Below are positions 5,267 through 46,791 of a stretch of DNA of 64,000 bases, piece by piece. Numbering within the stretch: position 1 is the first letter of the stretch; each line of letters starts with the position of its first letter. The position numbers were made by a program, and so were the translations under genes. The notes under the pieces are model-generated. The model was not told the DNA's origin. It worked only from the letters and a program-made list of their open reading frames with translations, and ran no database searches. The stretch is from positions 124,001 through 188,000 of IMG/VR virus record IMGVR_UViG_3300032245_001746. One strand, 5' to 3'.

Positions 5267-5506
5267 ATGCAAAAATTATCTGAAGAAAATAAAAAAATTA
5301 TTTTTCAATCAATTGTTGAATTGAAAAAAGTTTTAAATCAAAATCATTCTAAAATAAATAAAAAATCAAGAGGTGGAGCACAAGTTGGTTGTATTTGTGG
5401 AAATTCACAAACTTGTGTACCTTGTAGTGGTTTAGCATTTATTAAATCTGCTATCGTTTATAACGATAAAGAAATGCTTGAATTTATTGGAAAAACTTGT
5501 TTATGA
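5267..5506 (+). CDS. Small Cys-rich hypothetical protein
   Basis: CICG..CVPC cluster. Confidence 0.55.
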   Translation: MQKLSEENKKIIFQSIVELKKVLNQNHSKINKKSRGGAQVGCICGNSQTCVPCSGLAFIKSAIVYNDKEMLEFIGKTCL

Positions 5507-20100: not shown

Positions 20101-22128
20101 TCTACAAATCTTTATGTATCATCAACTAATTTTGAACGATTAAGTATAAAGTCAAATAGTACACAGTATGAAATAAGCTCTATAGTAGGTTCTGTTGGCG
20201 GAAGTAATAGAGCTATTCATATTGGACACACTAATGCTGCTGGAGCGTTTACTTCGACATTAACAGTTGCAACTAATGGAAATATTAGTGTCAATGTCGA
20301 TTCTGCTTCGTTCACATTTGGAAAAGTTGGTACTAATAGTTTAGTAGGACAAAATGGCGATCTTTCTGTATTGTCTGGAGGAAATAGAATTCTTTTATTA
20401 GGAGATAATGGAAGTGGGTTAGCATTAGCTAGTTCAGTTGGAATTAATTGGTCTTCCTCAACTTCAGATGCTTATTCTCCTATTGATTATAGATTGCGTA
20501 GAAATGCTGCTGGCCAACTTGATGCTAGGGGTGATGGTGGATTACGAATTCGTAATTTGGCAAACTCAGCAGATGCTCCATTAACCGTTGGCGCAATCAC
20601 GGCGAGTGGCGACATTACTTCAACAGGATTCAAAAGTGGAAATGGCGGGTTATTTTTTCCTGCTGGATATACTGTATTAAGAGATTATTCTGGAAATAAT
20701 GTTTTTGGGGTTAACGCTACAGCGAATATACCTGTATGTTCAACAAATGGATATGGGATAGGAGTCAATTATTATACTCCAGATGTTATCTTAACAAGAG
20801 ATAATGCAAATATTCTTGCTTTACGTAATACGACTAATGCACAAACATTAAGACTATATAATACATATACTTCATCTACTAACAATGAATTTTTACAAAT
20901 CAGAGCAGTAGCTGGAGCTAATTTTGAAATAGGACCACAAAATAGATCTATTGGCGGATCGCTTAGAGGATTAACTATTGGAGGATATGTTGCAGGTAGT
21001 AACACAATTACTCCTTGGATGAAATTTGAAGATGGATATAATTACTCTCATCAGCATTTAAATATGCAAGATAAAAGTATCTTCAATGTTTATCGCCTTG
21101 AAAATTCATCTCAAATGCTTATTAATAGCCCAGAAGTATTTTTCGAAACATCAAATATTAGATTCAAAAATAATTGTTTAAGAACAGATGCAACTTCATC
21201 AGATCCATTCATCTTATATATGGTTGGAAAAACTTATGATGAAAGTGATGATGAATTTATTTCAATTAAAACTGCGTCAACTAGTGATTTTGAGTTTGGA
21301 GTTGGTCACAATAGTGTTGGGTCTTCTGTACAAAGAGGGCTTATAATTGGTAGTTATGATTCCACAATTAATGATACAATTAATCCTTGGCTTAAATTTT
21401 CTACTACTGGTTCTGCTGAATTTTTTGATGCATCAGAATCAATAGTTAAAATAAGTTCTGGCGGTTTGTGTATACAATCAAATCAACTTTTAAAAATGTA
21501 TGATAATGTTGAAAATTCTTATATGTACATAACAGCATTAGACAATACGTTTTATATAAGAAATTTTGATAATGATAAAAATATAGATTTAGAAGCTAAA
21601 GAATTACGTGCTGGGTCAATTTGTACTTATAACACACTCACGCCAATGCCTATAGGGAATTTAACCGAAATCACCAGATTTTATGTTGATGGTGGAATAT
21701 CTGAATTTAATGGTGGAACTGCATTAAACGAAATTAAACATGCTAGAATTTGTCCTCCGACATATTCTAACAGCGTTTCATCTACAATAACTTCTGCTTC
21801 TTCTTTATGTATAGATGGACCGCCAATAGCGGGCACTAATGTGTCAATAACTAATAGTTATGCATTAAAAATTGAATCTGGAAATATATGCTTTTTTAAT
21901 GGTGTTAATATAGTTACAGATATAACTGTTGGTACAAAAATTGGAACAAGTTCTACTCAAAAATTAGGATTTTGGAATGCAACTCCAGTTACACAACCAA
22001 CTACATCGGTTGCTGCTGCAACTCGTGTTGGTAATGCTGGAACTACAATTACAACAGCCGATACTTTTGACGGATACACTATAGCCCAAGTAATTAAAGC
22101 TCTTAGATCTGTTGGGGTTTTAGCTTAA
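17143..22128 (+). CDS. Long tail fibre / receptor-binding protein
   Basis: 1661 aa, Gly/Ser/Thr/Ala-rich, internal repeats, C-terminal KLGFWNATPV..QP..AL..G fibre tip motif. Confidence 0.85.
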   Translation: MNQVFRVVTRLQDLDDFYGSLTDDQYLSFDSSLDKFTLKSFNFIPISGYNNPISLGNLGDSNSVDPLLTISRTISSGSTNAHAFSDSSNFIRNGYAYNSFDARINAGFSGHTYDHYAAFQSLPNINNGSWSDVYGFYSSATVNGNITRFNHAWVDDCIGTGSITTQYGYYCASLAKATNNWAFYSAGSTPSRIGELSVGDKFWITPTNTSVEIGYNIRYKNGDWYPTETSSYYCLLEPHYPSTNSFAIFTGTTPSDANAPISDWHVSLRCANDSTAIGPSGPFIFGTISNMVQIGGVSSSFPAIKRNGAAINFRVANDSADADITSKGLTASGPILSTNTYTSATNFEQLRIRSNSTQYEVSSIVGSAGGSPRPIQIGHTNAAGIFSSALSIAIDGGVLASGTVSSVGSVATRFTAERTATANALIELKTSAGSIFVGQGASGIFGVSNAPDLTAAAFKVTTSTGDVSAGAITASGKITTGTSTTSQQGLLTNRIDPIDQGGVLIGFGSGSIGTMIVNQFNVVYQSTTRKVFSSTTNLNSTADLSYGRDSAGVFGIYTTAAGSTKAALTCGAITASSFNWVQADSSGGRNRLIAGAASGIDIQANENTNPLFRITYAGTEYPLSITRAAITANVPILVTNVYTSTTNFEQLRIRSNSTQYEISSIIGSAGGSNRDIVIGHVDAAGTMTAALTGVTIYASGLVESRRVYLWESFQGHYSFGRNAILGASSAAGVVGGDFGITAATNAAGTVDTRLRRLGSGSLGLISGDANSTTYGSFTAGAITANGLITTSGSANTYSVTLPNTVGIAARNSGNTAWNRILNYTAANQCAVGDFDGGGGGLGLYGSGANLWTISSAGHLAASGAFNITTTGTVTAPVVSFPNTTTPAFPASGIIAFCPGSSDLWFRSAYGSSYIQIGGGSTTTFASAGNMTVSGAGGVRLQSNPLSSGPTVFAKVPSTTAINFRNNADSADIDLTAGAITVSGPILSTNLYVSSTNFERLSIKSNSTQYEISSIVGSVGGSNRAIHIGHTNAAGAFTSTLTVATNGNISVNVDSASFTFGKVGTNSLVGQNGDLSVLSGGNRILLLGDNGSGLALASSVGINWSSSTSDAYSPIDYRLRRNAAGQLDARGDGGLRIRNLANSADAPLTVGAITASGDITSTGFKSGNGGLFFPAGYTVLRDYSGNNVFGVNATANIPVCSTNGYGIGVNYYTPDVILTRDNANILALRNTTNAQTLRLYNTYTSSTNNEFLQIRAVAGANFEIGPQNRSIGGSLRGLTIGGYVAGSNTITPWMKFEDGYNYSHQHLNMQDKSIFNVYRLENSSQMLINSPEVFFETSNIRFKNNCLRTDATSSDPFILYMVGKTYDESDDEFISIKTASTSDFEFGVGHNSVGSSVQRGLIIGSYDSTINDTINPWLKFSTTGSAEFFDASESIVKISSGGLCIQSNQLLKMYDNVENSYMYITALDNTFYIRNFDNDKNIDLEAKELRAGSICTYNTLTPMPIGNLTEITRFYVDGGISEFNGGTALNEIKHARICPPTYSNSVSSTITSASSLCIDGPPIAGTNVSITNSYALKIESGNICFFNGVNIVTDITVGTKIGTSSTQKLGFWNATPVTQPTTSVAAATRVGNAGTTITTADTFDGYTIAQVIKALRSVGVLA
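18138..20245 (+). repeat. Three ~52-codon internal repeats in tail fibre (~18138, ~19042, ~20088)
   Basis: PILxTNxYxSxTNFExLxIxSNSTQYExSSIxGSxGGSxRxIxIGH occurs three times. Confidence 0.85.
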
Positions 22129-34629: not shown

Positions 34630-34663
34630 TTGAGGTTCTCAATCTTTTTTTTTGGACTTACCA

Positions 34664-35980
34664 ATGAGCAAATTAGTAGTTGAAGTTTGTCAAATTTCAA
34701 AAGTTTCTTCTCACCCTAATGCAGATAAACTTGATGTAATTCAAGTTAAAGGCTGGGATACAATTGTTTCAAAGGGTACGTTTAAAGAAGGTGATAAATG
34801 CATATTTTTCCCTCCAGATTCTGTACTTCAACCAGAACTTTATAATTCCCCAAATGATCCTATCACACCTGGAAGATTAAATAATTCAAATTATTTAAAA
34901 ACATTACCAACTGATTTTGAGGGAAATAAACCTAGTGGCAAAAGAGTTACTGCTTGTCGTCTAAGAGGCTCTGTGTCTTATGGATTGGCAATTCCTCTAG
35001 ATTTAAATTATGGCGATTTAGATTGGGATGTAGGCACTGATGTTTCTGAATTTTTTAAAGTAACTAAATACGAGCCACCAGTTGAATCTGTAATGGGCGA
35101 ATGTGAAAAGTTTAATTCAAGATTTTATCCATATAAAAGCATCGAACATTATGCTAATTTTACAGATCTATTTCAAGATGAAGAAGAAGTAATTTTTACC
35201 GAAAAGGTGCATGGAACCAATTCTAGAGTTGGATTAATTTTAGAACCAGACTCAACAGGAAATTCACAATGGACCTATGCCGCAGGTTCTCATTCTGTTA
35301 GAAGAAAAGAGTTTTCCAACATTGAAACCAGAGTTTTAGCTTCAAAACTTGAAGAAAAAAACATTAAAATTCTTAAAAAAGATGACGTTTCTTATTTTAA
35401 AGATGAAAATGGTATTTTTTGGATGATAAATCAAGAGATAATATCAGATATTGGTATGAAATATCAAGTCGTTCAAGTCAATTCAGATTTTGAATTGATT
35501 AAACGTAAATCTGATTATTGGTTACCATTAACAGAAAATATGAAAAATTTATTGAATTATTTAAAAGATAATTTTAAAACTGAAGAAACAATGCACTCTA
35601 TAATGATTTATGGAGAAATATACGGATTTGGAGTTCAAGATATGTGTTATGGTTTAAATCGTAAATCATACAAAGCTTTTGATATTGCTATTAATAATAT
35701 TTATCTTGATTATGATTATCAAATTGAATTATTTAATAAGTTTAACATTGAAGTTGTTCCTGTATTATATAGAGGACCATTTAGTCAAGAAAAAGTTAAA
35801 GAGTTTACTACTGGACCTACAACCATTTGTGATACAAAAAATGCTGGAAAATTTAAAGGAAGAGAAGGAATTGTGATTAAATCTGTTATTGAAAATAAAA
35901 TGTTTAACAAACCTAGAAAAATAGCAAAATCTGTTTCTGCTGATTATTTGTCAAGAGAAAATGGAACAGAGTTTCACTAA
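34664..35980 (+). CDS. RNA ligase (DRB0094/Rnl2-like with N-terminal OB domain)
   Basis: HPNADKL, RLRG..S.GL, TEKVHGTN (motif I), YGEIYG, AFDI, REGIVIK. Confidence 0.9.
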   Translation: MSKLVVEVCQISKVSSHPNADKLDVIQVKGWDTIVSKGTFKEGDKCIFFPPDSVLQPELYNSPNDPITPGRLNNSNYLKTLPTDFEGNKPSGKRVTACRLRGSVSYGLAIPLDLNYGDLDWDVGTDVSEFFKVTKYEPPVESVMGECEKFNSRFYPYKSIEHYANFTDLFQDEEEVIFTEKVHGTNSRVGLILEPDSTGNSQWTYAAGSHSVRRKEFSNIETRVLASKLEEKNIKILKKDDVSYFKDENGIFWMINQEIISDIGMKYQVVQVNSDFELIKRKSDYWLPLTENMKNLLNYLKDNFKTEETMHSIMIYGEIYGFGVQDMCYGLNRKSYKAFDIAINNIYLDYDYQIELFNKFNIEVVPVLYRGPFSQEKVKEFTTGPTTICDTKNAGKFKGREGIVIKSVIENKMFNKPRKIAKSVSADYLSRENGTEFH

Positions 35981-35989
35981 AGGAAAAAT

Positions 35990-36391
35990 ATGAAATTAGA
36001 ATCTTTTGGAACTTTACTTTATAGAAAAATTAATTCAAAAATAGAAGTTTTACTTGTACACCCATCAGGAAAGTCAGATCAAGCATGGTCTATTCCAAAA
36101 GGAAATAAAAATGATGGTGAAAAAGGAATCGAAGCAGCAGTAAGAGAAACTTTGGAAGAAACTGGAGTTTCAATCAACATTGAAGATTTACATTCATTTG
36201 GTTATGTTGTATATAAATCAAAGAAAGTCGTTCATTGTTATGCGGCTGAAGTGGGTCCAGAAATAAAACCAATTTGTAATTCTTGGGAAGTTGATAAAGC
36301 AGAATTTGTTGAAATAAATAAAACTTTAACAATTATTCATAAAAAACAAGCAGAATTTATTTCTAAATTAATACAACAATTGAAAGTTTAA
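35990..36391 (+). CDS. NUDIX hydrolase
   Basis: PKG.....E....AAVRETLEETG Nudix box; VLLVHP, EVDKAEF. Confidence 0.92.
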   Translation: MKLESFGTLLYRKINSKIEVLLVHPSGKSDQAWSIPKGNKNDGEKGIEAAVRETLEETGVSINIEDLHSFGYVVYKSKKVVHCYAAEVGPEIKPICNSWEVDKAEFVEINKTLTIIHKKQAEFISKLIQQLKV

Positions 36392-36395
36392 AATC

Positions 36396-37400
36396 ATGAA
36401 AATCAAAAAAGATTCTCTCGGAGACAGAATCAAATATTATGAGTCGTTTTGTACAAACACAAGATTATATCATACTATTCCAATTATTATAAGACTTGAT
36501 GGGTGCTCGTTTCATGTCTTTACGAAAGGTTTAAATAGACCATTTGATGAAAGACTTTCTCATTGTATGTTAGAAACAACAAAATTTCTTTGCAAAGAAG
36601 TTAATGCAACTATTGGATATACTCAATCTGACGAAATAACTCTTGTTTTAGGTACTCAAAATTTTGATAGTAAAGTATACTTTGATGCTAAACTTTTTAA
36701 ATTAACTTCTGTTTTAGCTTCTAAGGCAACAGTTAAATTTAACGAGTTGATACGTCAAAATTTACCAGAAAAAGCAAGTAAAAATCCAGTATTTGATTGC
36801 AGGATTTTTAACGTTCCTTCAGAAGAAGAGGCTATTAATTGTTTAATTTGGCGTCAAAATGATGCTAAAAGAAATGCTATTTCAATGGCAGCACAAGCAA
36901 AATTTTCTCACAAAGAATTGCATGGTAAATCTTCTAAGCAAATGTTGGAGATGTTAGAAGCTAAAAATGTTGATTTTAAAAAGTATCCAGGATTTTTCAA
37001 AAATGGAGTTTTTGTTAAAAAGAAAACTTTAACATTCTTAAAAGAATGTTTTGTTAAAATAAATCCAGACAACCTTGTTGTATCCAATAATAGTTTAACT
37101 TCTATTAAAGATTATAGATGGTATATTGAGGAAATTAATTCTAAAAAGTCTATAATTAGATACTCAGATGGATCAATTAATTTAAGTTCTGTAGCTGTAA
37201 CTTATTTAAAATCAGAACAAGAAGCTGAAGATTTAAAAAACTTTATATCTAATGTTTGTGCTAAATTTAGTTTAGAGGATTCTCCAGAATCTTTTACAAG
37301 AAATAATTGGGAAAATGTTTTTGAAGATTTAGAATTATCAAATCTTGAAAACAGAGTTGATTTTGTTTACCGAAACACTGATCCAATTTTTAAAAAGTGA
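36396..37400 (+). CDS. tRNA(His) guanylyltransferase Thg1-like
   Basis: IRLDGCSFH.FT, YTQSDEITL, FDCR, WRQ.DA.RN.I. Confidence 0.92.
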   Translation: MKIKKDSLGDRIKYYESFCTNTRLYHTIPIIIRLDGCSFHVFTKGLNRPFDERLSHCMLETTKFLCKEVNATIGYTQSDEITLVLGTQNFDSKVYFDAKLFKLTSVLASKATVKFNELIRQNLPEKASKNPVFDCRIFNVPSEEEAINCLIWRQNDAKRNAISMAAQAKFSHKELHGKSSKQMLEMLEAKNVDFKKYPGFFKNGVFVKKKTLTFLKECFVKINPDNLVVSNNSLTSIKDYRWYIEEINSKKSIIRYSDGSINLSSVAVTYLKSEQEAEDLKNFISNVCAKFSLEDSPESFTRNNWENVFEDLELSNLENRVDFVYRNTDPIFKK

Positions 37401-37446
37401 TTTACAATTGACACTGATTGCAAATAGAGTAGTTTGCAATCAGTGT
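37401..37446 (+). promoter_or_regulatory. Hairpin overlapping sigma70-like promoter upstream of nicotinamidase
   Basis: 14-bp arms ACACTGATTGCAAA/TTTGCAATCAGTGT; TTGACA at 37408 and TTTACA at 37401. Confidence 0.55.
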
Positions 37447-37470
37447 TTTGTTTTTATTAAAGGGTTTAAA

Positions 37471-38346
37471 ATGAGAAAAATAGATTTGGTAATTATTGAT
37501 CCGCAAAATTCATTTTGCAAAGTTGTTCCACAAGCAGATCAACAAGTTATCCATGATGGAGAACTCTGTGTTCCTGGTGCGTGGGAAAGTATGGCAGTTA
37601 GATTGCCAAAAATGATTGAAAAATCAAAAAAAATGTTTAAGTCAATTAGTGTTACTTTGGATAGCCATAATCCATTCCATATTGCACACCCTTGCTTATA
37701 TAAAGATTCAAAGGGAAATCAACCATCACCATTTACCATCATGCGACAAGAAAATGGTTCAATTATTGGTAGCGTGTTTAATGCATCAACCAATCAATTT
37801 GTTGATGTGGGAGAATATTTTGGTATTAAACCAAGTCTTCACAAAATAATTGTTGAATATTTGATTAAGCTTAAAGCTTTAAACAAATTTCCACATTGTA
37901 TTTGGCCACCACACTGTTTAATTGGAACTTCTGGTCATAATGTTGTACAACCTCTTGCACAAGCTTTGTTTGACTGGACCCAAAGAACAATTGCAAATGT
38001 TGATTATGTTACAAAAGGATCAAATCCTTTCGTTGAACATTTTTCTGCTGTTAAAGCAGAAGTAGAAGATCCGGGAGATCTATCAACACAATTGAATACA
38101 GATTTCATTAAGAAACTCGATGAATCTGACGAGATTGTGTTTGCTGGTGAGGCAAGAAGTCACTGTTTAAATAACACGGTTCGAGATATTGTAGATTCGT
38201 TTTCTGATGATTCTTTCGTTAAGAAATGCGTGTTGCTTCTTGACGCTTGTGATGACGTGCCTGGATTTGAATCATACGGAGAATCTTTTGTTAAAGATAT
38301 GACGGCACGTGGTATGAGAGTTGCTCAAACTACTGATTATGTATAA
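37471..38346 (+). CDS. pncA: Nicotinamidase (long isochorismatase family)
   Basis: IIDPQNSF, LDSH, WPPHC, TKG, AGEA.SHC; start moved to ATG 37471. Confidence 0.8.
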   Translation: MRKIDLVIIDPQNSFCKVVPQADQQVIHDGELCVPGAWESMAVRLPKMIEKSKKMFKSISVTLDSHNPFHIAHPCLYKDSKGNQPSPFTIMRQENGSIIGSVFNASTNQFVDVGEYFGIKPSLHKIIVEYLIKLKALNKFPHCIWPPHCLIGTSGHNVVQPLAQALFDWTQRTIANVDYVTKGSNPFVEHFSAVKAEVEDPGDLSTQLNTDFIKKLDESDEIVFAGEARSHCLNNTVRDIVDSFSDDSFVKKCVLLLDACDDVPGFESYGESFVKDMTARGMRVAQTTDYV

Positions 38347-38365
38347 TTTATAGAAAGGCATAGAA

Positions 38366-39091
38366 ATGTCTAGTGAAAATTTAAGTTCAGGTTTAGATTT
38401 AAATAAAGGTAAAACTTTTAATTTTTCTTCCACAAATATTAATGATCTAGGAGCAGACAGTTATACGCTTGTAACAATAGCTGTCGATACAAGCGGAAGC
38501 ACTTCTTGTTTCATTGATAAAATGGAAAAATTACTTAAAGAAATTGTAAGAGCATGCTCTTTAGATCCAAGAGCAGACAATTTAATGATAAGAATTGTCA
38601 CATTTGATTCACAAGTTTCTGAATTGCATGGCTTTAAACTTTTATCCTCTATCAATCAAGACGATTATCAAGGATCTTTAAGATCAGGCGGAATGACAGC
38701 ATTAAATGATGCTTCTGTCAATTCGATTGAAGGTATCAATAAATATGGAAGAGATTTGCTCGAAAAAGAATTTGGAGTAAACGGATTTTTTATCTGTATA
38801 ACAGATGGTCAAGATAATCAATCGGCTTTACCAGCCTCACGAGTTGCATCTTCTTTAAAAGAATCTGTCAATGGAGAAAACTTGGAATCAATGCTTTCAA
38901 TTTTAATTGAACTTGGTGATTCGACTGAATTGGACAGATTCTACAACGAAGTAGGATTTGATCAACATGTTAAAATTGAAGATGTAACCGAGTCTTCTTT
39001 TGCAAAACTTGCTGGATTTATTAGTAAATCAATCAGTAGTCAAAGCCAAGCCTTAAACAGTGGAGGACCAAGTAAGCCTCTTACATTTTAA
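38366..39091 (+). CDS. VWA domain protein (TerY-like)
   Basis: MIDAS DTSGS, T.L.DA, ITDG.DN.S. Confidence 0.85.
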   Translation: MSSENLSSGLDLNKGKTFNFSSTNINDLGADSYTLVTIAVDTSGSTSCFIDKMEKLLKEIVRACSLDPRADNLMIRIVTFDSQVSELHGFKLLSSINQDDYQGSLRSGGMTALNDASVNSIEGINKYGRDLLEKEFGVNGFFICITDGQDNQSALPASRVASSLKESVNGENLESMLSILIELGDSTELDRFYNEVGFDQHVKIEDVTESSFAKLAGFISKSISSQSQALNSGGPSKPLTF

Positions 39092-39175
39092 TTTTTGTAA
39101 ATAATAAATGTTATTACTCAGATATCTTATCAGATTCAACTATATAAAATTATATAATTTGATAAGGAGTTTAAT

Positions 39176-39923
39176 TTGATTAATTATAGATTTGGTGATT
39201 GGACGGTAATAAAAAAAGTAACAAATATTGAAAAAACAAAAAATTGTAAAACTTATTGGATTTGTCGTTGTAAGTGTGGTTTTGAAAGAAATTTCACTAC
39301 TTCTTACATTAATACAAATCAAGCAACATGTTGTGATCAATGTAAATTTGAAATTAAATTGTCTAAAGATAAAGAAATTCGCGAAAAATATTTAAATACC
39401 AAACATGGAACTTGGGAAGTAATTTCATATTGTGGTAAAAATAAGCATGGTAGTCGCATTTGGATGTGCAGATGCGAGTGTGGAAAAGAAAGAACTTTTT
39501 TAACATCTTATCTTTCTGGAAACGGAAAAAGATCTGCACAAATATGCAAAAATTGTGAATTGAAAAATTTAGAATTAGAAAATAGAATTTTTTTATATAC
39601 CTGATAGATTTTGGTATAAATTTACAAATTCATCACAACGCAGGAACAAATCTGTAGAGATAACAAAAGAACAAGCTAATGATATTTATTTGAAACAAAA
39701 TAAAAAATGTGCATATACGAATATAGATTTATATTTTACTAAATTTAATACTAATTTTAACAGATATACAAATGCATCAATTGATAGAATTGATTCTAGT
39801 AAACCATATACGCTGGAAAATATTCAGTGGGTTGATAAAAAAATTAATATTATGAAAAGTTCTTATAAATCAGAAGAATTTATTAAACTGTGCTGTTTGG
39901 TATCGAAAAAATTTACATTTTGA
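39176..39923 (+). pseudogene. HNH-type (His-Me finger) homing endonuclease split by a frameshift
   Basis: Two W.C.C.CG repeats, then a +1 shift at the T7 run 39588-39594 into IPDRFW...CAYT..SIDRIDSSKPY..NIQWV...N.MK. Confidence 0.75.
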
Positions 39924-39942
39924 TTTTTCAATCAATTGAAAC

Positions 39943-39984
39943 AAAGCCGTTCGAATGAGATTTACTTTTCATTCGAACGGCTTT
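39943..39984. terminator. Strong hairpin upstream of nadE
   Basis: 16-bp arms AAAGCCGTTCGAATGA/TCATTCGAACGGCTTT. Confidence 0.6.
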
Positions 39985-40031
39985 ATCATTTGGTGTCTGC
40001 TTTATTTGTTGAATTTTTAAGGAAATTGAAA

Positions 40032-42068
40032 ATGGAAGATCTTATTAGAGTTGCATGTTGTTCACCCGAAGTTTTTGTTTCTAATCCTGTTAAAAACAGA
40101 ATTGAAATATTGAAGGCAATAAATAAACATGCAAAAAATGCTGATGTTATCGTGTTTCCAGAATTATCTATTACAGGATATACTTGTAAAGATTTATTTC
40201 TTAAAGAAGAATTGTTAAATTCAAGTTTGAAAGAAGTTATAAATTTAGCAAAGGAAATTCCAAGAAACAAATTAGTATTTGTTGGTTGCCCATTACAATT
40301 AAGTAATGGCAAAATAGCTAATTGTGCATTTGGACTTAATGATGGAGTTATTAAAGGCATTGTTCCAAAACAATATTTGCCAAATTATAAAGAATTTGAA
40401 GAAAAAAGATGGTTCACTCAGGATTTAACGGAAGAAATTGATATTGTTTTAGAAAACAATTGTCATGTTCCTTTTGGTTCTAATATTATTTTTCTTTTTG
40501 GAAAAGCAAGAATGGCTGCAGAGGTATGTGAAGATTTATTTGCTCCAATTCCACCATCTACATTTACCGCTATGGCTGGAGCAAATATAATTGTAAATTT
40601 GAGTGCTTCAAATGAACTTATTGGAAAAGCAGAATATAGAAGAAAGTTGGTCGAACAACAAAGTGCCAGAACTCTATCTGCATATATTTATTGTTCTGCT
40701 GGTCCAACTGAATCAACCACCGATTTAGTTTTTGGTGGTCATAATATTATTTCAGAAAATGGTTCTATTTTAAAACAAAGTGAAAGATTTAAAGATTTTT
40801 CATATATCGAATATGATATTGATGTCCAGAAACTTAATCTTGAAAGAAGTGGTAATCCAACTTTTTCTGATTGTCAAAAAAGATTTGTTAAACCTGAAAA
40901 TTTCACATGGGTTCCTATTAATTTGAATCCAAATTTAAAACAAGATATTTTAAGACCAAAAGTTAAAAATCCATTTTTGTCTAATGACCCACAGGTGATG
41001 GAATCAGTATGTGATGAAATTATAAATATTCAAATATGTGCTTTAAAGAAAAGACTAAGTAGACTATCAAGTAGTAAAACTGTAATTGCGGTTTCTGGAG
41101 GATCTGATTCTACTGTAGCTTTATTGTCACTATGTGCAGCATATGATTCAATTGGATTTTCAAGAAAAGACATTTTGGGTATTACCATGCCAGGTTTTGG
41201 AACAAGTAACAGAACCAAAAATAATTCAGATGCTTTAATGGCGAGTCTTGGAATTACTCAAAAAGTAATTGATATTAAGCCAACAGCAACACAAACTTTC
41301 ATTGATATGAATCATATTCCATTCAAAGATTATAATATAACTATAGATGGAATAGAAATGAGCGTTGAAGAATATTTCAGAGGCAAACCTTCTAATTTAA
41401 CAGTTGAAGAAATTAGTAAAGTTCTAAATTATTTGCCTTCAAACGCTAAAGATTTAACGTTTGAAAATGTTCAAGCTAGACTTCGCACATTTTATGCAAT
41501 GAGTAGCGGATTTACTGTTGGAACTGGGGATTTATCAGAAGCAGCACTTGGTTGGTGTACATATAATGGTGATCATATGTCTATGTATAATCCTAATTGT
41601 ACTATTCCAAAAACATTGATTAAGTCATTAATTTTACATTTTGCTAATAATTATTCAAATTATTTCACTCAAGAACTTGGTGGAGATTTAAGTAAAATAT
41701 TAAATTCAATTTATGAAACTGTCATATCTCCAGAACTTTTGCCTTTAAAAGATGGCGAGATTGTTCAGTCTTCTGAAGAAAGTGTTGGATCTTACAACTT
41801 AAATGATTTTTTCTTATATAACTTTATCAGAAACAATTTTTGTTTTTCTAAAATATTAGATTATGCTGTACACTCATATGAAGATGAATATACTAAAGAA
41901 GAAATTGAAAAGTGGTTGAAGTTATTTTTTAAGAGATTTTTTCAGGCACAGTTTAAACGTTCTTGCTGTCCAGATGGACCAAAAGTAGGATCAGTAGGAT
42001 TATCACCAAGAGGTGATTGGAGAATGCCATCAGATGCAGATTTTGATTTATGGTGCAACAATGAATGA
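40032..42068 (+). CDS. nadE: Glutamine-dependent NAD+ synthetase
   Basis: Nitrilase domain (FPELSITGY, PKQYLPNY.EF.EKRWF, CEDL) plus synthetase domain (SGGSDST, ENVQARLR, SPELLP, QFKRS..PDGPK); start at ATG 40032. Confidence 0.96.
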   Translation: MEDLIRVACCSPEVFVSNPVKNRIEILKAINKHAKNADVIVFPELSITGYTCKDLFLKEELLNSSLKEVINLAKEIPRNKLVFVGCPLQLSNGKIANCAFGLNDGVIKGIVPKQYLPNYKEFEEKRWFTQDLTEEIDIVLENNCHVPFGSNIIFLFGKARMAAEVCEDLFAPIPPSTFTAMAGANIIVNLSASNELIGKAEYRRKLVEQQSARTLSAYIYCSAGPTESTTDLVFGGHNIISENGSILKQSERFKDFSYIEYDIDVQKLNLERSGNPTFSDCQKRFVKPENFTWVPINLNPNLKQDILRPKVKNPFLSNDPQVMESVCDEIINIQICALKKRLSRLSSSKTVIAVSGGSDSTVALLSLCAAYDSIGFSRKDILGITMPGFGTSNRTKNNSDALMASLGITQKVIDIKPTATQTFIDMNHIPFKDYNITIDGIEMSVEEYFRGKPSNLTVEEISKVLNYLPSNAKDLTFENVQARLRTFYAMSSGFTVGTGDLSEAALGWCTYNGDHMSMYNPNCTIPKTLIKSLILHFANNYSNYFTQELGGDLSKILNSIYETVISPELLPLKDGEIVQSSEESVGSYNLNDFFLYNFIRNNFCFSKILDYAVHSYEDEYTKEEIEKWLKLFFKRFFQAQFKRSCCPDGPKVGSVGLSPRGDWRMPSDADFDLWCNNE

Positions 42069-42312
42069 ATATGAAGACGAATCTTATTATCAAACTTATA
42101 TTGGATTGATAGAATATTTAAAACTTCATGATTATAAAAGAATCTATTTAGCTAACATGATGTCTCTCCACAAAGATGATATTAAAAAAATGAATTTGTT
42201 TATGTCATTTGATGAAATTCTTGTATCATCAAATGACCAAATAAATTTAACTATAGAAAAAATACAAAAAGCTTTTAATATTAATTTGAAAAAAGGAAAT
42301 GTTCAAATATGA
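42061..42312 (+). CDS. Small hypothetical protein
   Basis: Overlaps the nadE stop and the PP2C start. Confidence 0.6.
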   Translation: MNEYEDESYYQTYIGLIEYLKLHDYKRIYLANMMSLHKDDIKKMNLFMSFDEILVSSNDQINLTIEKIQKAFNINLKKGNVQI

Positions 42313-43109
42313 TTTTTAATCAAGATAATTTTTTATCAATTGGAAGTACGCATGAAATATGTCAAGATTATTCATTGCTTAATGATAAATTTATTGCCGT
42401 ATCAGATGGTTGTTCCGGAAGTAATTTAAGTGATTATGGATCTAGAATTATAACAAAATCTTCTTTAAATAATCAAAACAATTTTGAAGATAAAGAAGCT
42501 TTTGTTAAAACAACAATTAATTCTTCAAAAGAAATTATAAATCATCTTGAACTTCAAGAAGATTGTCTTTGTGCAACATTATTGGCTTGTAAGGCAAATG
42601 AAGATTTTTTTGATGTTTTAATTTGTGGTGATGGAACCATAGTTTGTGAAGATAAATCAAATAATTTGCATGTTTATGAATATTCATATGAATCAGGTGC
42701 TCCTTTTTACCCATTATATCTTCAAAATAAAGATTTAATAAAATTATATTTAGAAAAATTTGGATCATATCACACTTTGAATTATTATAAATATAATTTA
42801 ATAAATTTTGATTTGATTGAGTTTACAACTAGTAAAATTCCCATTAATGAAAATTTAAATACACATAAGTTTCCAACATCTGAATTTATTAGTGTTGCTT
42901 TATTTTCTGATGGTTTGAATTCATTTCAAGTGAAATCAAATAAAACGATTTATTCAAGCAAAAAAGTTCTACAGGATTTGTATGATTTTAAAGGATACAC
43001 TGGTAGATTCTTACTGAGAAGATGCAGAAAGCAGTTCTCTATTTTTGAACAAAATGGTATATCTCATTACGATGATTTTTCTATGGCTATGATAAGGACA
43101 TTAAATTGA
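42309..43109 (+). CDS. PP2C-like phosphatase (TerY-P type)
   Basis: G..H..CQD, AVSDGCS, ATLL, GDG, LFSDG, DD.S. Confidence 0.88.
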   Translation: MIFNQDNFLSIGSTHEICQDYSLLNDKFIAVSDGCSGSNLSDYGSRIITKSSLNNQNNFEDKEAFVKTTINSSKEIINHLELQEDCLCATLLACKANEDFFDVLICGDGTIVCEDKSNNLHVYEYSYESGAPFYPLYLQNKDLIKLYLEKFGSYHTLNYYKYNLINFDLIEFTTSKIPINENLNTHKFPTSEFISVALFSDGLNSFQVKSNKTIYSSKKVLQDLYDFKGYTGRFLLRRCRKQFSIFEQNGISHYDDFSMAMIRTLN

Positions 43110-43666
43110 AAAAAGTTGTTATCTTTGGAACATCTGGAAACCCAATCCATATTGGACATGAATTAATAATTAAAGAAATTTCTAAACATTTTGATGAAGT
43201 GTGGGTTTGTCCTTCTTATAAATCATCAATTAAAAATTTAATTGATTCAAAACACAGATTGAAAATGACTGAAATTTCGGTTAATTCGTTAAATAACGAT
43301 AAAGTTAAAATTTTTGACCATGAAATAAAAAATAAAATTTCCGTAAACACATATGATTTTTTAAAATATTTAAAATCCACTTTCTCAGATAAACAATTTT
43401 ACTTTGGTATAGGTGCAGATAACACTAAAGATATATTAAATTGGAAAAATTCAAATGATCTTATAAATGAAAACAACTTTTTAATCTTTAAAAGAAAAGG
43501 TTATGATTTAAATGTAAATATTTTTAAATCATATGAGACAATTGATGTTGAATTTATTGATGTGAGTTCTACTTATATAAGAAATAATATTAGAAATGAA
43601 AATGTTAAAAGTCTTCTGAATCCAGAAGTTTACAATTACATTGTTGAAAACAATCTCTATTTTTAG
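43106..43666 (+). CDS. nadD: Nicotinate-nucleotide adenylyltransferase
   Basis: NPIHIGH, HRL.M, IGADN...W, VSSTYIR, VYNYI..NLY. Confidence 0.9.
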   Translation: MKKVVIFGTSGNPIHIGHELIIKEISKHFDEVWVCPSYKSSIKNLIDSKHRLKMTEISVNSLNNDKVKIFDHEIKNKISVNTYDFLKYLKSTFSDKQFYFGIGADNTKDILNWKNSNDLINENNFLIFKRKGYDLNVNIFKSYETIDVEFIDVSSTYIRNNIRNENVKSLLNPEVYNYIVENNLYF

Positions 43667-43673
43667 GTGAATC

Positions 43674-45392
43674 ATGAAGTATTTTATAAAAGGTGGCGAC
43701 TCAGTAGATCTTTCTCAAAAAGATTTTATTGCATCTGGTGGTTTTGGCAAAGTTTATAAAAAAAATAATTTTGCATACAAAATATATGATAATCCATCCA
43801 ATATGCTTCCAATTGAAAAAATATCAGAATTAGCAGTATTAAAAGATCAAGATATAATAAAGCCAGAGAGAATAATTACAAATTCATCTAAAGAATTTGT
43901 AGGTTACACAATGCGTTACGTAAAAGGTTCTCCTATATGCAAAATGTTTACACACACTTTCAAAAAGAACAATAAAATAACAGACAAAATTTGTTTATCG
44001 CTTTTGAGCAAATTTTATACAAAAATAGAACATGTACATTCTAACAATATTTTGTTGGTAGACGTAAACGAACTTAATTTTTTAGTAAATGATTCGTTTA
44101 ACGAAATTTATTTTATAGATACAGATGGCTATCAAACTAAATCATTTAAAGCCACTGGCATAATGGATAGTATTAGAGATCGACATTGTCAAAATAATGA
44201 CTTTAATGAAAATACTGATTGGTTTTCTTGGGGAATACTTGCTTGTCAATTAATTACTGGACTCCACCCTTATCGTGGAGGGCATCCTGATTTTGACAAT
44301 ATTGATCTTGCTAAAAGAATGGATGCAAGAATGATTAAAAATATTTCTATTTTTAATTCAAAAACCAAACTTCCTCCTTTTATTAAAAATTTTGATAATA
44401 TTCCATCTGCACTTAAACAATGGTTTATTTCAGTTTTTGAAAATGGCAAAAGGATTAAACCTCCAAAAGACTTTGACTCAGTAATTATATTGACTCCAAT
44501 TAATGTAAAGGAAATAACAGGAACAAACTTATTTGATATATCTTTACTTTATTCTTTCAAACAAGAATTAATTAAATATAAAGAAATAAATGGAGATAAA
44601 TTTGCATTGTTGAATGATAAATTAATTTTTAACGATAAGTCTTACAATATTCCAAATGTAAAATCTGAATTGTTTTTTAATGTTCCATCTTCTTTAAATA
44701 AACCATTTGTTTATTACATAGAAAATGAAACATTAAAATGTTTTGATTGCATTTATCAAACAGAAATTGAATGTTCTTTAAAATCTACTGATATTTTTCA
44801 AGTTGATGATAGAATTTATTATGTAAATAAAGATAAATTTTATGAAATTGAAATTATTAAATTATCAAATAAAGTAATTGTTGAATCTAATTCTGTAGGA
44901 AATGCATTAGATATTCCTAATGCAACCAAATCATTTGATGGAACATTAATGCAAAACATGTTGGGAAGACATTATTTTTCAATTAATCCTAAATCTAGAT
45001 TCAGCTATCAAATAGGAATTAAAGAATTAGATTCTTATACAGTTATTGATGCGAAATATGAAAAAAATGTTTTAATAGTTTCTGCAATTACCAGAAAAGG
45101 TATTAATGAAAAATTTGTAATTAGATTTAATTCTAATTATACTTCTTATTCTTTAAGAAAGATATCTAATGTTCAAAATTCTGATGTTAATTTTACAGTA
45201 AATCAATCTGGAATTTGCATATTCCTAGTTGATGACTCAAATATAGAAATATTTTCTAATAATTCTGAGACAACTTCTGTTAAATCATTTAATGATCAAA
45301 GTATAGATACTAGTATGATCCTAACATCCAATGCATCAAAAGTAATGTTTGTAAAAGATAAATCAGTTTATTCTATATCTGTTAAAAACTAA
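43674..45392 (+). CDS. Ser/Thr kinase (TerY-P type) with C-terminal extension
   Basis: GGFGKVY, AYKIY, DVNELNFLV, IDTD.YQ, TDWFS...HPY.G. Confidence 0.88.
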   Translation: MKYFIKGGDSVDLSQKDFIASGGFGKVYKKNNFAYKIYDNPSNMLPIEKISELAVLKDQDIIKPERIITNSSKEFVGYTMRYVKGSPICKMFTHTFKKNNKITDKICLSLLSKFYTKIEHVHSNNILLVDVNELNFLVNDSFNEIYFIDTDGYQTKSFKATGIMDSIRDRHCQNNDFNENTDWFSWGILACQLITGLHPYRGGHPDFDNIDLAKRMDARMIKNISIFNSKTKLPPFIKNFDNIPSALKQWFISVFENGKRIKPPKDFDSVIILTPINVKEITGTNLFDISLLYSFKQELIKYKEINGDKFALLNDKLIFNDKSYNIPNVKSELFFNVPSSLNKPFVYYIENETLKCFDCIYQTEIECSLKSTDIFQVDDRIYYVNKDKFYEIEIIKLSNKVIVESNSVGNALDIPNATKSFDGTLMQNMLGRHYFSINPKSRFSYQIGIKELDSYTVIDAKYEKNVLIVSAITRKGINEKFVIRFNSNYTSYSLRKISNVQNSDVNFTVNQSGICIFLVDDSNIEIFSNNSETTSVKSFNDQSIDTSMILTSNASKVMFVKDKSVYSISVKN

Positions 45393-45785: not shown

Positions 45786-46592
45786 CTAGTAGTTAATCCA
45801 TAAGCATTCAACTTTTTGTTGCTTAACTTTACTTTGAGACGCATGGTTTGGTACAGTTTTCTTTACGCACTTCCATCCCTTATATAATCGTTTATATAAT
45901 GCAGATTGATAACCACTTAAAACAACTTTTCCTTTAAAGTTGTTTAAAACATGTGCAAGTTTAATATGTTGGTCAGTATCTAGCTCAAATTCATAGCATT
46001 CTTTTGCAACACGTGTATCTGGAAGATATGGTGGGTCTACATAGCAAAGTGTTTCTTTTTCATCAAATGCTTTAATTGCATCAAATGCATTTTTATTTAA
46101 TAAAAATGTTTCTTTTAATCTCTTTGAAATAATTGGTAGTTCTTCTAAAATTGTAATCCAAGCATTAACTTCTCCAGGATTGCCTCCTCTTGTGCGATCT
46201 GACCAAGAAAATGCTTTTTTTAATCCGCCTCTTGACATTCTTCTAATTACAAATTCATTTATTGCATAATCCAGATCGGAATTTTTAGAAGTTTTTTCAT
46301 ACAATGATTTTTCAAATGATTCTTTGCAATATTCTATTTTTTTTAATTTCTTTATAAAAACATTGTTTTCATCTCTCAAGGCTCTAAGTATTTGCACTAC
46401 GCCTGGATCTAAATCATTTAAGATTTCTGTTTTTGATGGCTTTTTATTCAAAAAAACACTTGCAGCACCACAAAATGGCTCTAAATAATTTAATTGTTCA
46501 TAATTTTCTGGGAAATTATCAATTATCCAACCGTGGAGATAATTTTTACCACCATGAATTTTAAAAGGTGGTCTAATTTTTTCTTTTGTCAT
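45786..46592 (-). CDS. DNA adenine methyltransferase (D12/Dam family)
   Basis: GGK, YLEPFCGAASV, LNDLD, DPPY; start likely ATG 46592. Confidence 0.9.
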   Translation of the reverse strand: MTKEKIRPPFKIHGGKNYLHGWIIDNFPENYEQLNYLEPFCGAASVFLNKKPSKTEILNDLDPGVVQILRALRDENNVFIKKLKKIEYCKESFEKSLYEKTSKNSDLDYAINEFVIRRMSRGGLKKAFSWSDRTRGGNPGEVNAWITILEELPIISKRLKETFLLNKNAFDAIKAFDEKETLCYVDPPYLPDTRVAKECYEFELDTDQHIKLAHVLNNFKGKVVLSGYQSALYKRLYKGWKCVKKTVPNHASQSKVKQQKVECLWINY

Positions 46593-46791
46593 TGCGTGCT
46601 TTCTGATCAAAATTGTGAATTGCACAATTGCAAATATGGCAATTTATATCAAAATTGCCATATTTATCTTGCCAGAACCAAGCGTTTTTTAATTGTTTAG
46701 AATTTTGACAACTTTCGCATATCGCAACTACAACTTGCTCTTCAAAAGGCACAGAATTGTCTATCCAAAAATAACATGGTTTATTGTGCAT
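46573..46791 (-). CDS. Small Zn-ribbon protein
   Basis: CESC and CHIC pairs. Confidence 0.55.
   Translation of the reverse strand: MHNKPCYFWIDNSVPFEEQVVVAICESCQNSKQLKNAWFWQDKYGNFDINCHICNCAIHNFDQKARNDKRKN

What the first reader, a model, noticed from the sequence alone, without database searches (positions are those of the whole stretch)
35990..43666. Deamidating NAD+ reconstitution route (NUDIX, PncA, NadD, NadE), distinct from NARP1/NARP2
Seen: co-oriented NUDIX, nicotinamidase, glutamine-dependent NadE and NadD. Known: SIR2/TIR/SEFIR defences split NAD+ into ADP-ribose and nicotinamide, and the described phage countermeasures use Adps+Namat (NARP1) or Nampt+Nmnat (NARP2). Inference: here nicotinamide goes to nicotinate (PncA), NaMN, NaAD (NadD) and NAD (NadE), with the NUDIX recycling ADP-ribose to ribose-5-P. 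This would be a Preiss-Handler-type third route whose deamidated intermediates may escape NADases. The PncB step is missing from this window.
Basis: partly seen in the sequence, partly recalled or inferred. Interest (0 to 1): 0.8.

Follow-up and report, generated by a model that had tools for sequence, protein, structure and literature searches.

The report
Huge-phage NAD salvage module lacking PncB
This huge phage carries most of a four-step pathway that rebuilds the cofactor NAD+ from nicotinamide, interleaved with a kinase/phosphatase/vWA trio; close relatives carry the full set, but this phage has lost one enzyme (PncB), and similar phage gene clusters have already been reported.

Summary
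The four genes are present, intact and co-oriented, in a 320-kb IMG/VR huge-phage record. NadE (glutamine-dependent) and NadD pass curated cut-offs. The "PncA" misses the Pfam and NCBIfam cut-offs. Profile, fold and residue evidence still identify it as a nicotinamidase-type enzyme with a ~75-residue insertion.

Across 45 non-redundant loci the conserved order is PncA-like, vWA, [PncB], [NadE], PP2C, [NadD], Ser/Thr kinase. The three nearest relatives (70-75% PncA identity) have PncB exactly where this window has a frameshifted HNH cassette. Contigs from three other samples lack both HNH and PncB there, so the loss is real. No PncB, Nampt, Prs or PnuC is found in the held 320 kb.

In Myxococcota and Desulfatibacillum the same PncA-like gene or module sits beside NrtR, the NAD-salvage regulator.

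It resembles Ap4A hydrolases and lies in an RNA ligase-NUDIX-Thg1 unit closed by a terminator hairpin.

It is not a new "third route": NARP3 exists, and pncB-nadD-nadE clusters in jumbo phages were reported in 2024. The conserved embedding of a TerY-P-like phospho-switch, and its cellular NrtR-linked counterpart, appear undescribed. Any counter-defence role is untested.

The parts
34652..35980 (+). RNA ligase (RNA_ligase plus PHA02142 OB domain). First gene of the upstream RNA-repair unit, not part of the NAD module.
   Evidence: Pfam PF09414 and PF21189; phrog_968. Found upstream of the module in 8 of 45 loci.
35990..36391 (+). Small NUDIX hydrolase (133 aa) of the Ap4A-hydrolase/NUDT2/MutT1 type. 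Most likely part of the RNA ligase-Thg1 unit rather than an ADP-ribose pyrophosphatase.
   Evidence: PF00293. Best PDB hits are Ap4A hydrolases 3i7u and 1kt9 and NUDT2. All NCBIfam equivalogs are below cut-off. Gaps of 9 nt and 4 nt to its neighbours.
36396..37400 (+). Thg1-like 3'-5' nucleotidyltransferase (tRNA 5'-end repair type).
   Evidence: PF04446 E 1.2e-30; phrog_4717 E 1e-81.
37410..37457 (+). Terminator-like hairpin (16-bp stem, then a T-run) separating the RNA-repair unit from the NAD module.
   Evidence: Scan hit. Fold -23.7 kcal/mol, z = -5.7, 0 of 200 shuffles as good.
37471..38346 (+). PncA-like nicotinamidase (291 aa) with a ~75-residue insertion. Predicted step: nicotinamide to nicotinate.
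   Evidence: Conserved residues D10, D64, H66, H70, W145-P146-x-H148-C149, K182, H231, C232. The profile hits only Pnc1 (7.7e-8) and Mtb PncA in the PDB, aligning H148/K182/C232 to Pnc1 H94/K122/C167 and D64/H66 to D51/H53. AF2 pLDDT 93. The Foldseek top 8 are all nicotinamidases.
38366..39091 (+). Stand-alone vWA protein with an intact MIDAS motif and a conserved Ser-rich C-terminal tail (TerY-like).
   Evidence: MIDAS D41-x-S43-x-S45...T111...D147 conserved at 92-100%. The profile hits integrin I-domains. 13 of 31 family members hit Pfam VWA.
39092..39923 (+). Polymorphic HNH endonuclease cassette, split by a frameshift near 39595 into ORFs 39176-39604 and 39690-39923. It occupies the slot where relatives have PncB. 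It is flanked by the direct repeat CTTACATTTT(A/G)ATTTTT at 39080-39096 and 39910-39926.
   Evidence: phrog_374 HNH. The two ORFs match residues 6-147 and 147-251 of single ORFs in L013 and L002, in different frames. Contigs in runs X2, X3 and X6 join 39049 to 39913 without the cassette. Repeat read directly from the sequence.
39943..39984 (+). Strong 18-bp hairpin upstream of NadE (terminator or regulatory element).
   Evidence: Fold -35.2 kcal/mol, z = -6.95.
40032..42068 (+). Glutamine-dependent NAD+ synthetase NadE (nitrilase-type glutaminase plus synthetase domain). Predicted step: NaAD to NAD+.
   Evidence: NF002730, 730.7 bits against a cut-off of 473. E45/K114/C167 and S356-G-G-x-D-S361 invariant in 9 long homologues.
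42013..42312 (+). Small conserved ORF of unknown function between NadE and PP2C (likely start ATG 42061). It overlaps the ends of both neighbours.
   Evidence: ORF list. ORFs of 94-110 aa lie at the same position in L055, L075 and L077.
42309..43109 (+). PP2C-family protein phosphatase, catalytically competent.
   Evidence: PF13672. D20, D33-G34, D108-G109, D201-G202 and D255-D256 are 100% conserved in 36 homologues.
43106..43666 (+). NadD, nicotinate-mononucleotide adenylyltransferase. Predicted step: NaMN to NaAD.
   Evidence: TIGR00482, 126.4 bits against a cut-off of 112.45. Full-length match to S. aureus, B. subtilis and B. anthracis NadD structures. H18 and R159 invariant.
43674..45392 (+). 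Eukaryotic-type Ser/Thr protein kinase (residues 1-265) fused to a C-terminal all-beta, propeller-like domain (287-572).
   Evidence: PF00069. G22, G23, K36, E52, D130, N135 and D149 conserved. AF2 pLDDT 89. Foldseek hits protein kinases and WD40 domains.

Best explanation
The interval holds two adjacent units of a huge phage found in wastewater and river samples.

Unit 1 is RNA ligase, NUDIX and Thg1-like. It is an RNA/tRNA-end repair operon closed by a terminator hairpin. The NUDIX belongs here.

Unit 2 is a deamidating NAD+ salvage module that is conserved across huge phages. Its full form reads PncA-like, vWA, PncB, NadE, PP2C, NadD, Ser/Thr kinase.

The predicted chemistry runs in four steps:
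1. Nicotinamide to nicotinate (PncA-like).
2. Nicotinate to NaMN (PncB, using PRPP).
3. NaMN to NaAD (NadD, using ATP).
4. NaAD to NAD+ (NadE, using glutamine and ATP).

This phage lineage has lost PncB. A polymorphic, frameshifted HNH cassette now lies in that slot. Step 2 must therefore come from the host, and the phage supplies the entry step and the last two steps.

The vWA/PP2C/kinase trio resembles TerY-P in domain composition. It is inferred to be a phosphorylation switch acting on or with the pathway, and the Ser-rich vWA tail is a candidate target.

The likely benefit is to keep NAD+ available in the infected cell, including after NADase-type defences release nicotinamide.

Shown here: gene identities, conserved catalytic residues, synteny, loss of PncB and the NrtR linkage. 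Inferred: enzyme activities, reliance on host PncB, the role of the trio and any counter-defence effect.
For: - NadE and NadD are above curated cut-offs and have their catalytic motifs.
- The PncA-like protein has the nicotinamidase triad and metal ligands, a confident fold and nicotinamidases as its top 8 structural matches.
- Among 45 non-redundant loci, vWA occurs in 40, PP2C in 36, the kinase in 36, PncB in 22, NadE in 17 and NadD in 11. Nine loci have the whole set.
- Loci with the full set are scattered over the PncA tree, and the window is sister to a full-set locus with 100/100 support.
- The nearest relatives have PncB between vWA and NadE.
- G000 has no PncB, Nampt, Prs or PnuC.
- An allele lacking both HNH and PncB is seen in three independent samples.
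- Start and stop codons overlap from NadE through the small ORF, PP2C and NadD to the kinase.
- In Myxococcota and Desulfatibacillum the PncA-like gene or module is followed by NrtR, the ADP-ribose-sensing regulator of NAD salvage.
- Terminator hairpin between Thg1 and PncA.
Against: - No enzyme activity or NAD+ measurement exists.
- The PncA-like protein fails the Pfam and NCBIfam cut-offs, and its ~75-residue insertion could change the substrate (for example NR, NMN or another amide).
- Without PncB the phage route is incomplete, and the host is unknown.
- 13 of 45 loci have the PncA-like gene and the trio but none of PncB, NadE or NadD within 10 kb. The core could therefore have a function that does not need them, although two such phages carry those genes elsewhere.
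- The record is only about 63% complete, so a PncB elsewhere in the genome cannot be excluded.
- Coverage by RNA-library contigs does not prove transcription.
Confidence: 0.65

Rival explanations
1. A self-contained third NAD+ reconstitution route in which the NUDIX turns ADP-ribose into ribose-5-P and AMP to feed PRPP, and deamidated intermediates evade NADases.
For: The four genes are co-oriented within 7.7 kb. One relative has a Macro-domain gene directly upstream of the orthologous NUDIX, which hints at ADP-ribose chemistry.
Against: The NUDIX is Ap4A-hydrolase-like, not AdpP/NudF-like. It lies in a different transcription unit. It is near the module in only 4 of 45 loci. The record has no Prs and no PncB. 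Evasion of NADases by NaAD or NaMN is pure conjecture.
Confidence: 0.08
2. The conserved core (PncA-like plus vWA, PP2C and kinase) is a signalling or stress module whose amidase acts on something other than nicotinamide. NadE, NadD and PncB are independent metabolic genes that happen to have lodged in it.
For: The core occurs without PncB, NadE or NadD within 10 kb in 13 of 45 loci. The PncA-like protein is below family cut-offs and has a large insertion. vWA+PP2C+kinase triads occur elsewhere with no NAD link (PMC11090510, PMC7159879).
Against: All six nicotinamidase-specific residues are conserved, including the metal site that other isochorismatase-family amidases lack. PncB is the most frequent extra gene (22 of 45 loci). 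The interleaved order is the same in distant clades. NrtR lies next to the module in bacteria.
Confidence: 0.12
3. Removing nicotinamide is the point, not making NAD+. The PncA-like enzyme would destroy nicotinamide, for example to relieve product inhibition of NAD-consuming phage enzymes or to starve competing phages' Nam-dependent NARP pathways. NadD and NadE would simply boost the host's last two steps.
For: This lineage keeps PncA, NadD and NadE intact although PncB is gone. Yeast Pnc1 is known to act by clearing nicotinamide (established knowledge).
Against: Most relatives pair PncA with PncB, the classical salvage couple. No Nam-inhibited enzyme such as Sir2, or NAD-dependent LigA, was found in the record: LigA is absent and Sir2 was not searched.
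Confidence: 0.07
4. In this phage the module is a decaying remnant. Loss of PncB broke the pathway, and the remaining genes are on their way out.
For: PncB is lost. A mobile HNH gene, itself frameshifted, sits in the slot.
Against: All remaining ORFs are full-length with invariant catalytic residues. The PncB-less allele is found at 95-99% identity in wastewater and river samples from different studies, so it persists. Host PncB is common in bacteria (8 of 14 control genomes).
Confidence: 0.08

Closest known systems
Preiss-Handler gene clusters of 'NAD-jumbo phages' (pncB-nadD-nadE, e.g. Kuafu_71; PMC11662467)
   Same: Huge or jumbo phages carry clustered nadD and nadE of bacterial type. In relatives of this window pncB is in the same cluster. 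The pathway logic is the same (Na to NaMN to NaAD to NAD+). That report is computational only, as is this one.
   Different: The window lacks pncB. It adds a divergent PncA-like entry enzyme, so the route starts from nicotinamide. The enzymes are interleaved with vWA, PP2C and a kinase, which that paper does not discuss: its text has no occurrence of 'kinase' or 'vWA', and pncA appears only in passing.
NARP1 (Adps+Namat), NARP2 (Nampt+Nmnat) and NARP3 (PnuC+NadR) phage NAD+ reconstitution pathways (bioRxiv 10.1101/2024.02.11.579819; PMC13464706)
   Same: Phage-encoded rebuilding of NAD+. Nicotinamide is the presumed starting material, as in NARP1 and NARP2.
   Different: No PRPS-like, NAPRTase-family or PnuC gene is in the record. 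The route runs through deamidated intermediates and needs four enzymes, two ATP and glutamine. No experimental counter-defence evidence exists.
Bacterial PncA-PncB-NadD-NadE salvage under NrtR control (pyridine nucleotide cycle)
   Same: Same four enzyme families. Cellular homologues of this PncA-like gene lie beside NrtR.
   Different: The PncA here is a distinct ~291-aa subfamily with a ~75-residue insertion. It is almost always coupled to a vWA protein and a kinase.
TerY-P triad (vWA TerY + PP2C + Ser/Thr kinase; Anantharaman 2012 as cited in PMC11090510; stand-alone defence system of Gao 2020)
   Same: Same three domain types in one operon. MIDAS, PP2C and kinase catalytic residues are intact.
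   Different: The kinase carries a beta-propeller-like C-terminus, not a zinc ribbon or OB fold. No PADLOC TerY-P model matches. The genes are phage-encoded and interleaved with NAD enzymes.

Membership tests
Nicotinamidase (PncA/Pnc1) | Isochorismatase-like alpha/beta fold closest to solved nicotinamidases | tested here: met
   AF2 pLDDT 93.1, pTM 0.90. Foldseek ranks 1-8 are Pnc1, A. baumannii PncA, and the Drosophila, P. horikoshii and Leishmania nicotinamidases.
Nicotinamidase (PncA/Pnc1) | Catalytic triad Asp-Lys-Cys | tested here: met
   D10 is invariant; K182 and C232 are conserved at >=90%. K182 and C232 align to Pnc1 K122 and C167. D10 maps to the Mtb PncA motif IVDVQNDF.
Nicotinamidase (PncA/Pnc1) | Metal site D-x-H ... 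H within WPxHC | tested here: met
   D64, H66 and H148 are invariant and align to Pnc1 D51, H53 and H94. WPPHC aligns to Mtb PncA WPPHCVSGTPG.
Nicotinamidase (PncA/Pnc1) | Score above curated family cut-off | tested here: not met
   PF00857 17.3 bits against 27. NF008623 22.8 bits against 174. A minority of homologues carry PF00857.
Nicotinamidase (PncA/Pnc1) | Hydrolysis of nicotinamide to nicotinate | not testable with these tools
   Needs an enzyme assay. Indirect support comes from PncB adjacency in 22 of 45 loci and NrtR adjacency in bacteria.
Glutamine-dependent NAD+ synthetase (NadE) | Curated equivalog score, nitrilase triad and SGGxDS ATP-PPase loop | tested here: met
   NF002730 730.7 bits against 473. 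E45/K114/C167 and S356-G357-G358-x-D360-S361 invariant.
NadD (NaMN adenylyltransferase) | Curated equivalog score; HxGH and SxTxxR motifs | tested here: met
   TIGR00482 126.4 bits against 112.45. GNPIHIGH and SSTYIR are read in the sequence. H18 and R159 invariant. Full-length match to NadD structures.
NadD (NaMN adenylyltransferase) | Preference for NaMN over NMN | not testable with these tools
   Needs kinetics.
ADP-ribose pyrophosphatase (NudF/AdpP-type NUDIX) | Nudix box plus the subfamily markers (Pro 16 residues downstream; AdpP/YffH model) | tested here: not met
   The Nudix box is present (G38-V60; residues counted by hand in the translation), but residue +16 is Lys. TIGR00052 13.5 bits against 79.55 and NudE 17.8 against 169. 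The nearest solved proteins are Ap4A hydrolases.
Complete Preiss-Handler cluster ('NAD-jumbo phage' criterion, PMC11662467) | pncB + nadD + nadE all phage-encoded | tested here: not met
   nadD and nadE are present. pncB is absent from the 320-kb record and from the syntenic slot in three other samples. The record is about 63% complete.
NARP1 | Adps (PRPS-like) + Namat (NAPRTase-like) | tested here: not met
   No match to PF13793 or PF04095 in G000.
NARP2 | Nampt + Nmnat | tested here: not met
   No NAPRTase-family gene. The only NAD-type adenylyltransferase is NadD-type. The second CTP_transf gene is HldE-like.
NARP3 | PnuC transporter + NadR | tested here: not met
   No match to PF04973. The NadR model gives only E 0.004, 16 bits against a cut-off of 341.
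TerY-P triad | vWA with MIDAS + PP2C + Ser/Thr kinase in one operon | tested here: met
TerY-P triad | Kinase C-terminal zinc ribbon or OB fold; match to the TerY-P defence models | tested here: not met
   The C-terminus is an all-beta, propeller-like domain. No PADLOC hit for vWA or PP2C; the kinase hits only PD-T4-6 and mad6 weakly.

The most novel reading that the evidence does not exclude
The seven-gene block (PncA-like, vWA, PncB, NadE, PP2C, NadD, kinase) is a single, phospho-regulated NAD+ reconstitution system of huge phages, in effect a 'NARP4'. In this reading the TerY-P-like switch senses NAD+ collapse or ADP-ribose-related signals and switches the deamidating pathway on. It would share ancestry with an NrtR-controlled PncA-vWA-kinase module of Myxococcota. 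The window would be a natural PncB-less variant that parasitises host PncB.
Probability: 0.25. Interest if true: 0.8.

Novelty: new variant of a known kind. Interest (0 to 1): 0.55.

Why it matters
NAD+ depletion is a major anti-phage strategy. Three phage rebuilding routes have experimental support, and none of them uses deamidated intermediates.

This work defines a widespread huge-phage module: more than 2,700 PncA-like homologues and about 45 distinct loci examined. The module would convert nicotinamide, the universal NADase product, to NAD+ through four classical enzymes. It is always wired to a vWA protein, a PP2C phosphatase and a kinase.

That gives a concrete, cloneable candidate for a fourth, regulated route. 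It also offers natural experiments: full, PncB-less and core-only variants. Finally, it links the module to an NrtR-associated counterpart in Myxococcota, which could reveal post-translational control of NAD salvage in bacteria.

For this particular window the message is more modest. It is an incomplete member of a partly described class.

Tried and rejected
- Megablast of 12 kb against GenBank phages found nothing. Only protein-level relatives exist.
- Rfam and tRNA scans of the window found nothing. The GC-rich island at 18-20 kb is a Gly/Ala/Ser/Thr-rich ORF, not rRNA.
- Alternative genetic codes are not needed. Code 11 gives 96% ORF coverage.
- I looked for a PncB remnant in the HNH slot and genome-wide at E<=10 and found none.
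- I first assumed the HNH cassette had replaced PncB. This was rejected, because HNH-less contigs join vWA directly to the NadE leader without PncB.
- I considered that the second cytidylyltransferase in the genome might be an NMNAT. It is PfkB-fused and HldE-like.
- I recalled the trio as Aravind's 'ternary system'. On reading, that term means MoxR-vWA-VMAP. The right comparison is the TerY-P triad, and PADLOC models do not match it.
- LigA, Tpt1, Prs and PnuC were not found, and there is only a weak Macro-like match.
- RNA-library contigs cover the genes, but the tool warns that this does not show transcription.


Full report
**Source.** The window is bases 124001-188000 of a 319,857-bp linear IMG/VR virus record. 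CheckV estimates it at 63% complete. GC is 28% and the standard code fits. No nucleotide-level relative exists among GenBank phages. The protein relatives are on 460-600-kb 'uncultured phage' genomes and many large metagenomic contigs. Near-identical DNA occurs in wastewater, river and activated-sludge runs.

**Observation.**
- NUDIX: 35990-36391 (PF00293).
- Isochorismatase-like ORF: real start ATG 37471, end 38346.
- Long glutamine-dependent NadE: real start ATG 40032, end 42068. NF002730 scores 730 bits against a cut-off of 473.
- NadD: 43106-43666. TIGR00482 scores 126 against 112, with full-length matches to solved NadD proteins.

- a Thg1-like gene (36396-37400);
- a vWA gene (38366-39091);
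- an HNH gene in two frames (39176-39604 and 39690-39923);
- a small ORF (42013-42312);
- a PP2C phosphatase (42309-43109);
- immediately after NadD, a Ser/Thr kinase (43674-45392).

An RNA ligase (34652-35980) precedes the NUDIX.

**Is the 'PncA' a nicotinamidase?** Single-sequence family searches are sub-threshold.
- The protein belongs to a tight family of more than 2,700 proteins of about 291 aa. Some are labelled 'nicotinamidase-related amidase' by JGI.
- In a 32-sequence alignment the conserved residues are D10, D64, H66, H70, W145-P146-x-H148-C149, K182, H231 and C232.
- A profile of that alignment hits only two PDB sequences, yeast Pnc1 (7.7e-8) and M. tuberculosis PncA.
- The printed alignments put H148, K182 and C232 on Pnc1 H94, K122 and C167, and D64 and H66 on D51 and H53. 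They match WPPHC to the Mtb WPPHCVSGTPG motif.
- From established structural work, these are the catalytic triad and zinc ligands of nicotinamidases.
- The AlphaFold model is confident (pLDDT 93). Its eight best PDB matches are all nicotinamidases.
- Relative to classical PncA there is an insertion of about 75 residues (roughly 75-140), made of beta-hairpins and a helix. Its meaning is unknown.

**Gene context.**
- tblastn and iterated HMM searches covered 54 related loci, plus the window itself (45 non-redundant in all). They show a fixed order: PncA-like, (small ORF), vWA, [PncB], [NadE], PP2C, [NadD], kinase.
- Counts within 10 kb are vWA 40, PP2C 36, kinase 36, PncB 22, NadE 17 and NadD 11. 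Nine loci have everything. The window is the only one with NadE and NadD but no PncB.
- On a PncA tree the full-set loci are scattered through several clades. The window is sister (100/100) to a full-set locus. The complete block is therefore probably ancestral, with repeated loss or relocation.
- Two 'core-only' phages do carry NAD synthase and NAPRTase genes elsewhere.
- The three nearest relatives by PncA identity (75%, 73% and 70%) all have a 391-396-aa NAPRTase (PncB) between vWA and NadE. So do a 546-kb contig and a 219-kb contig.

**The PncB slot in this phage.**
- No PncB is detectable anywhere in the record (PF04095; nine phage PncBs by tblastn at E<=10).
- The slot holds an HNH endonuclease gene. 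Its two ORFs match residues 6-147 and 147-251 of single ORFs in relatives, in different frames, so it is frameshifted near 39595.
- Contigs from two DNA runs and one RNA-library run from other samples join 39049 to 39913, skipping 863 bp.
- Read against the sequence, that allele ends the vWA gene with the same KPLTF-stop. It then continues straight into the NadE leader.
- The cassette is flanked by the direct repeat CTTACATTTT(A/G)ATTTTT.
- So the HNH gene is a polymorphic insertion. The absence of PncB is a genuine feature of this lineage and not an assembly artefact.
- In another relative the same slot holds a TnpB gene.

**Integrity of the other genes.** All catalytic signatures are conserved across homologues:
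- vWA MIDAS: D41-x-S43-x-S45, T111, D147;
- PP2C metal-binding aspartates;
- kinase: G-loop, K36, E52, D130, N135, D149;
- NadE: E45/K114/C167 and SGGxDS;
- NadD: H18 and R159.

The vWA identity is confirmed by profile hits to integrin I-domains and by Pfam VWA hits in 13 of 31 family members. The kinase model is a eukaryotic-type protein kinase plus a C-terminal beta-propeller-like domain. NadE, the small ORF, PP2C, NadD and the kinase have overlapping or abutting starts and stops, so they form an operon.

**Independent link to NAD.**
- The same PncA-like subfamily occurs in cellular genomes.
- In Myxococcota it is again followed by vWA, sometimes PP2C, and the kinase. A full-length NrtR (NUDIX plus NrtR winged helix) then follows on the same strand.
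- In Desulfatibacillum alkenivorans DSM 16219 the PncA-like gene lies close to NrtR.
- One such locus continues into lepA, and another lies in a 9.4-Mb chromosome, so these are chromosomal contexts.
- NrtR is the ADP-ribose-responsive repressor of NAD salvage regulons (established knowledge).
- This ties both the enzyme and the trio to NAD metabolism, independently of the phage data.

**The NUDIX.**
- It has a canonical Nudix box. Its closest solved relatives are Ap4A hydrolases, NUDT2 and MutT1.
- ADP-ribose pyrophosphatase models score far below cut-off. The proline expected 16 residues after the box in ADP-ribose pyrophosphatases is a lysine.
- It is packed between RNA ligase and Thg1 with gaps of 9 and 4 nt.
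- A 16-bp hairpin with a T-run (37410-37457; z = -5.7) separates that unit from PncA.
- It accompanies the module in only 4 of 45 loci.
- One relative has a Macro gene beside it, so an ADP-ribose-related role cannot be excluded.
- The better reading is an RNA-end repair operon.

**Literature.**
- NARP1 and NARP2 are described in bioRxiv 10.1101/2024.02.11.579819, which does not mention PncA or NadE.
- NARP3 is PnuC plus NadR (PMC13464706).
- An extension of NARP1 uses a Macro phosphatase.
- 'NAD-jumbo phages' with salvage or Preiss-Handler gene sets, including a pncB-nadD-nadE cluster, were reported from gut metagenomes (PMC11662467). That paper does not analyse a PncA, vWA or kinase linkage.
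- The survey by Iyer et al. does not mention nicotinamidase or NadE.
- Phage G has a PncA-like gene annotated with unknown role.
- vWA+PP2C+kinase triads (TerY-P) are known from bacteria and as a defence system. The window's trio matches them in domain composition only.
- I found no paper on a deamidating 'NARP4'.

**Verdict.**
- This is a deamidating NAD+ salvage module. In this phage it lacks PncB and must lean on the host.
- The NUDIX is probably unrelated to the pathway.
- The pathway class has already been noted computationally, so it is not a new 'third route'.
- What appears new is the conserved seven-gene architecture with an embedded phospho-switch, and its NrtR-linked bacterial counterpart.
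- The counter-defence function is plausible but untested.

Noticed in passing
L062-L068, L071, L074 (bacterial loci): In Myxococcota chromosomes and MAGs, the PncA-like, vWA, (PP2C) and kinase genes are followed on the same strand by a full-length NrtR regulator. In Desulfatibacillum alkenivorans the PncA-like gene lies near NrtR. Phage locus L016 also carries NrtR and two PncA-like paralogues.
   Followed up: partly
window 39092-39923; L075:9116-10267; L002, L013, L031, L053: The intergenic slot between vWA and NadE is a landing pad for mobile genes. The window has a polymorphic, frameshifted HNH cassette with flanking 17-nt direct repeats. Other relatives have HNH genes there, and L075/L076 have a TnpB (OrfB_IS605).
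   Followed up: yes
window 38366-39091 (residues 214-241): The vWA protein ends in a nearly invariant Ser-rich tail (S220, S222, S224, S225, S227). It is a candidate substrate for the neighbouring kinase and PP2C.
   Followed up: no
window 39943-39984: An 18-bp perfect hairpin (-35 kcal/mol, z = -6.9) lies in the NadE leader. It is retained in the HNH-less allele. It could be a terminator or a regulatory element.
   Followed up: partly
G000 302.5-303.1 kb (L078:1038-1583, minus strand): A second, 181-aa NUDIX gene with a slightly degenerate Nudix box (GFPGG...RELIEE). From memory it resembles NUDT16-type enzymes. Its substrate class was not examined.
   Followed up: no
G000 43.9-45.2 kb (L056:1893-3248, minus strand): A PfkB kinase fused to a cytidylyltransferase (HldE/RfaE-like, ADP-heptose type), near glycosyltransferase-rich regions. 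This suggests the phage makes sugar nucleotides.
   Followed up: partly
window 17143-22128: A 1,661-aa Gly/Ala/Ser/Thr-rich ORF with no Pfam match creates a 46% GC island in a 26% GC genome. It contains an internal duplication: the NFEQLRIRSNSTQYE...GSAGGS segment occurs twice. It is probably a fibre or surface protein.
   Followed up: partly
G000 3' end: The record ends in a run of (AATC)n, which suggests an assembly break at a simple repeat.
   Followed up: no
window 5497-7137; 60303-61583 (minus strand); 45786-46625 (minus strand): A DUF7487 plus Mom-family protein, a DUF1501 protein and a Dam-type (D12) methyltransferase. Together these suggest possible DNA-modification functions.
   Followed up: no
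L055:4208-5851; L077:1090-2751: Close relatives encode a Ro60/TROVE-vWA protein and a sigma-70 region-2 protein a few kb upstream of the Thg1-PncA region. This adds to the RNA-repair flavour of the neighbourhood.
   Followed up: no
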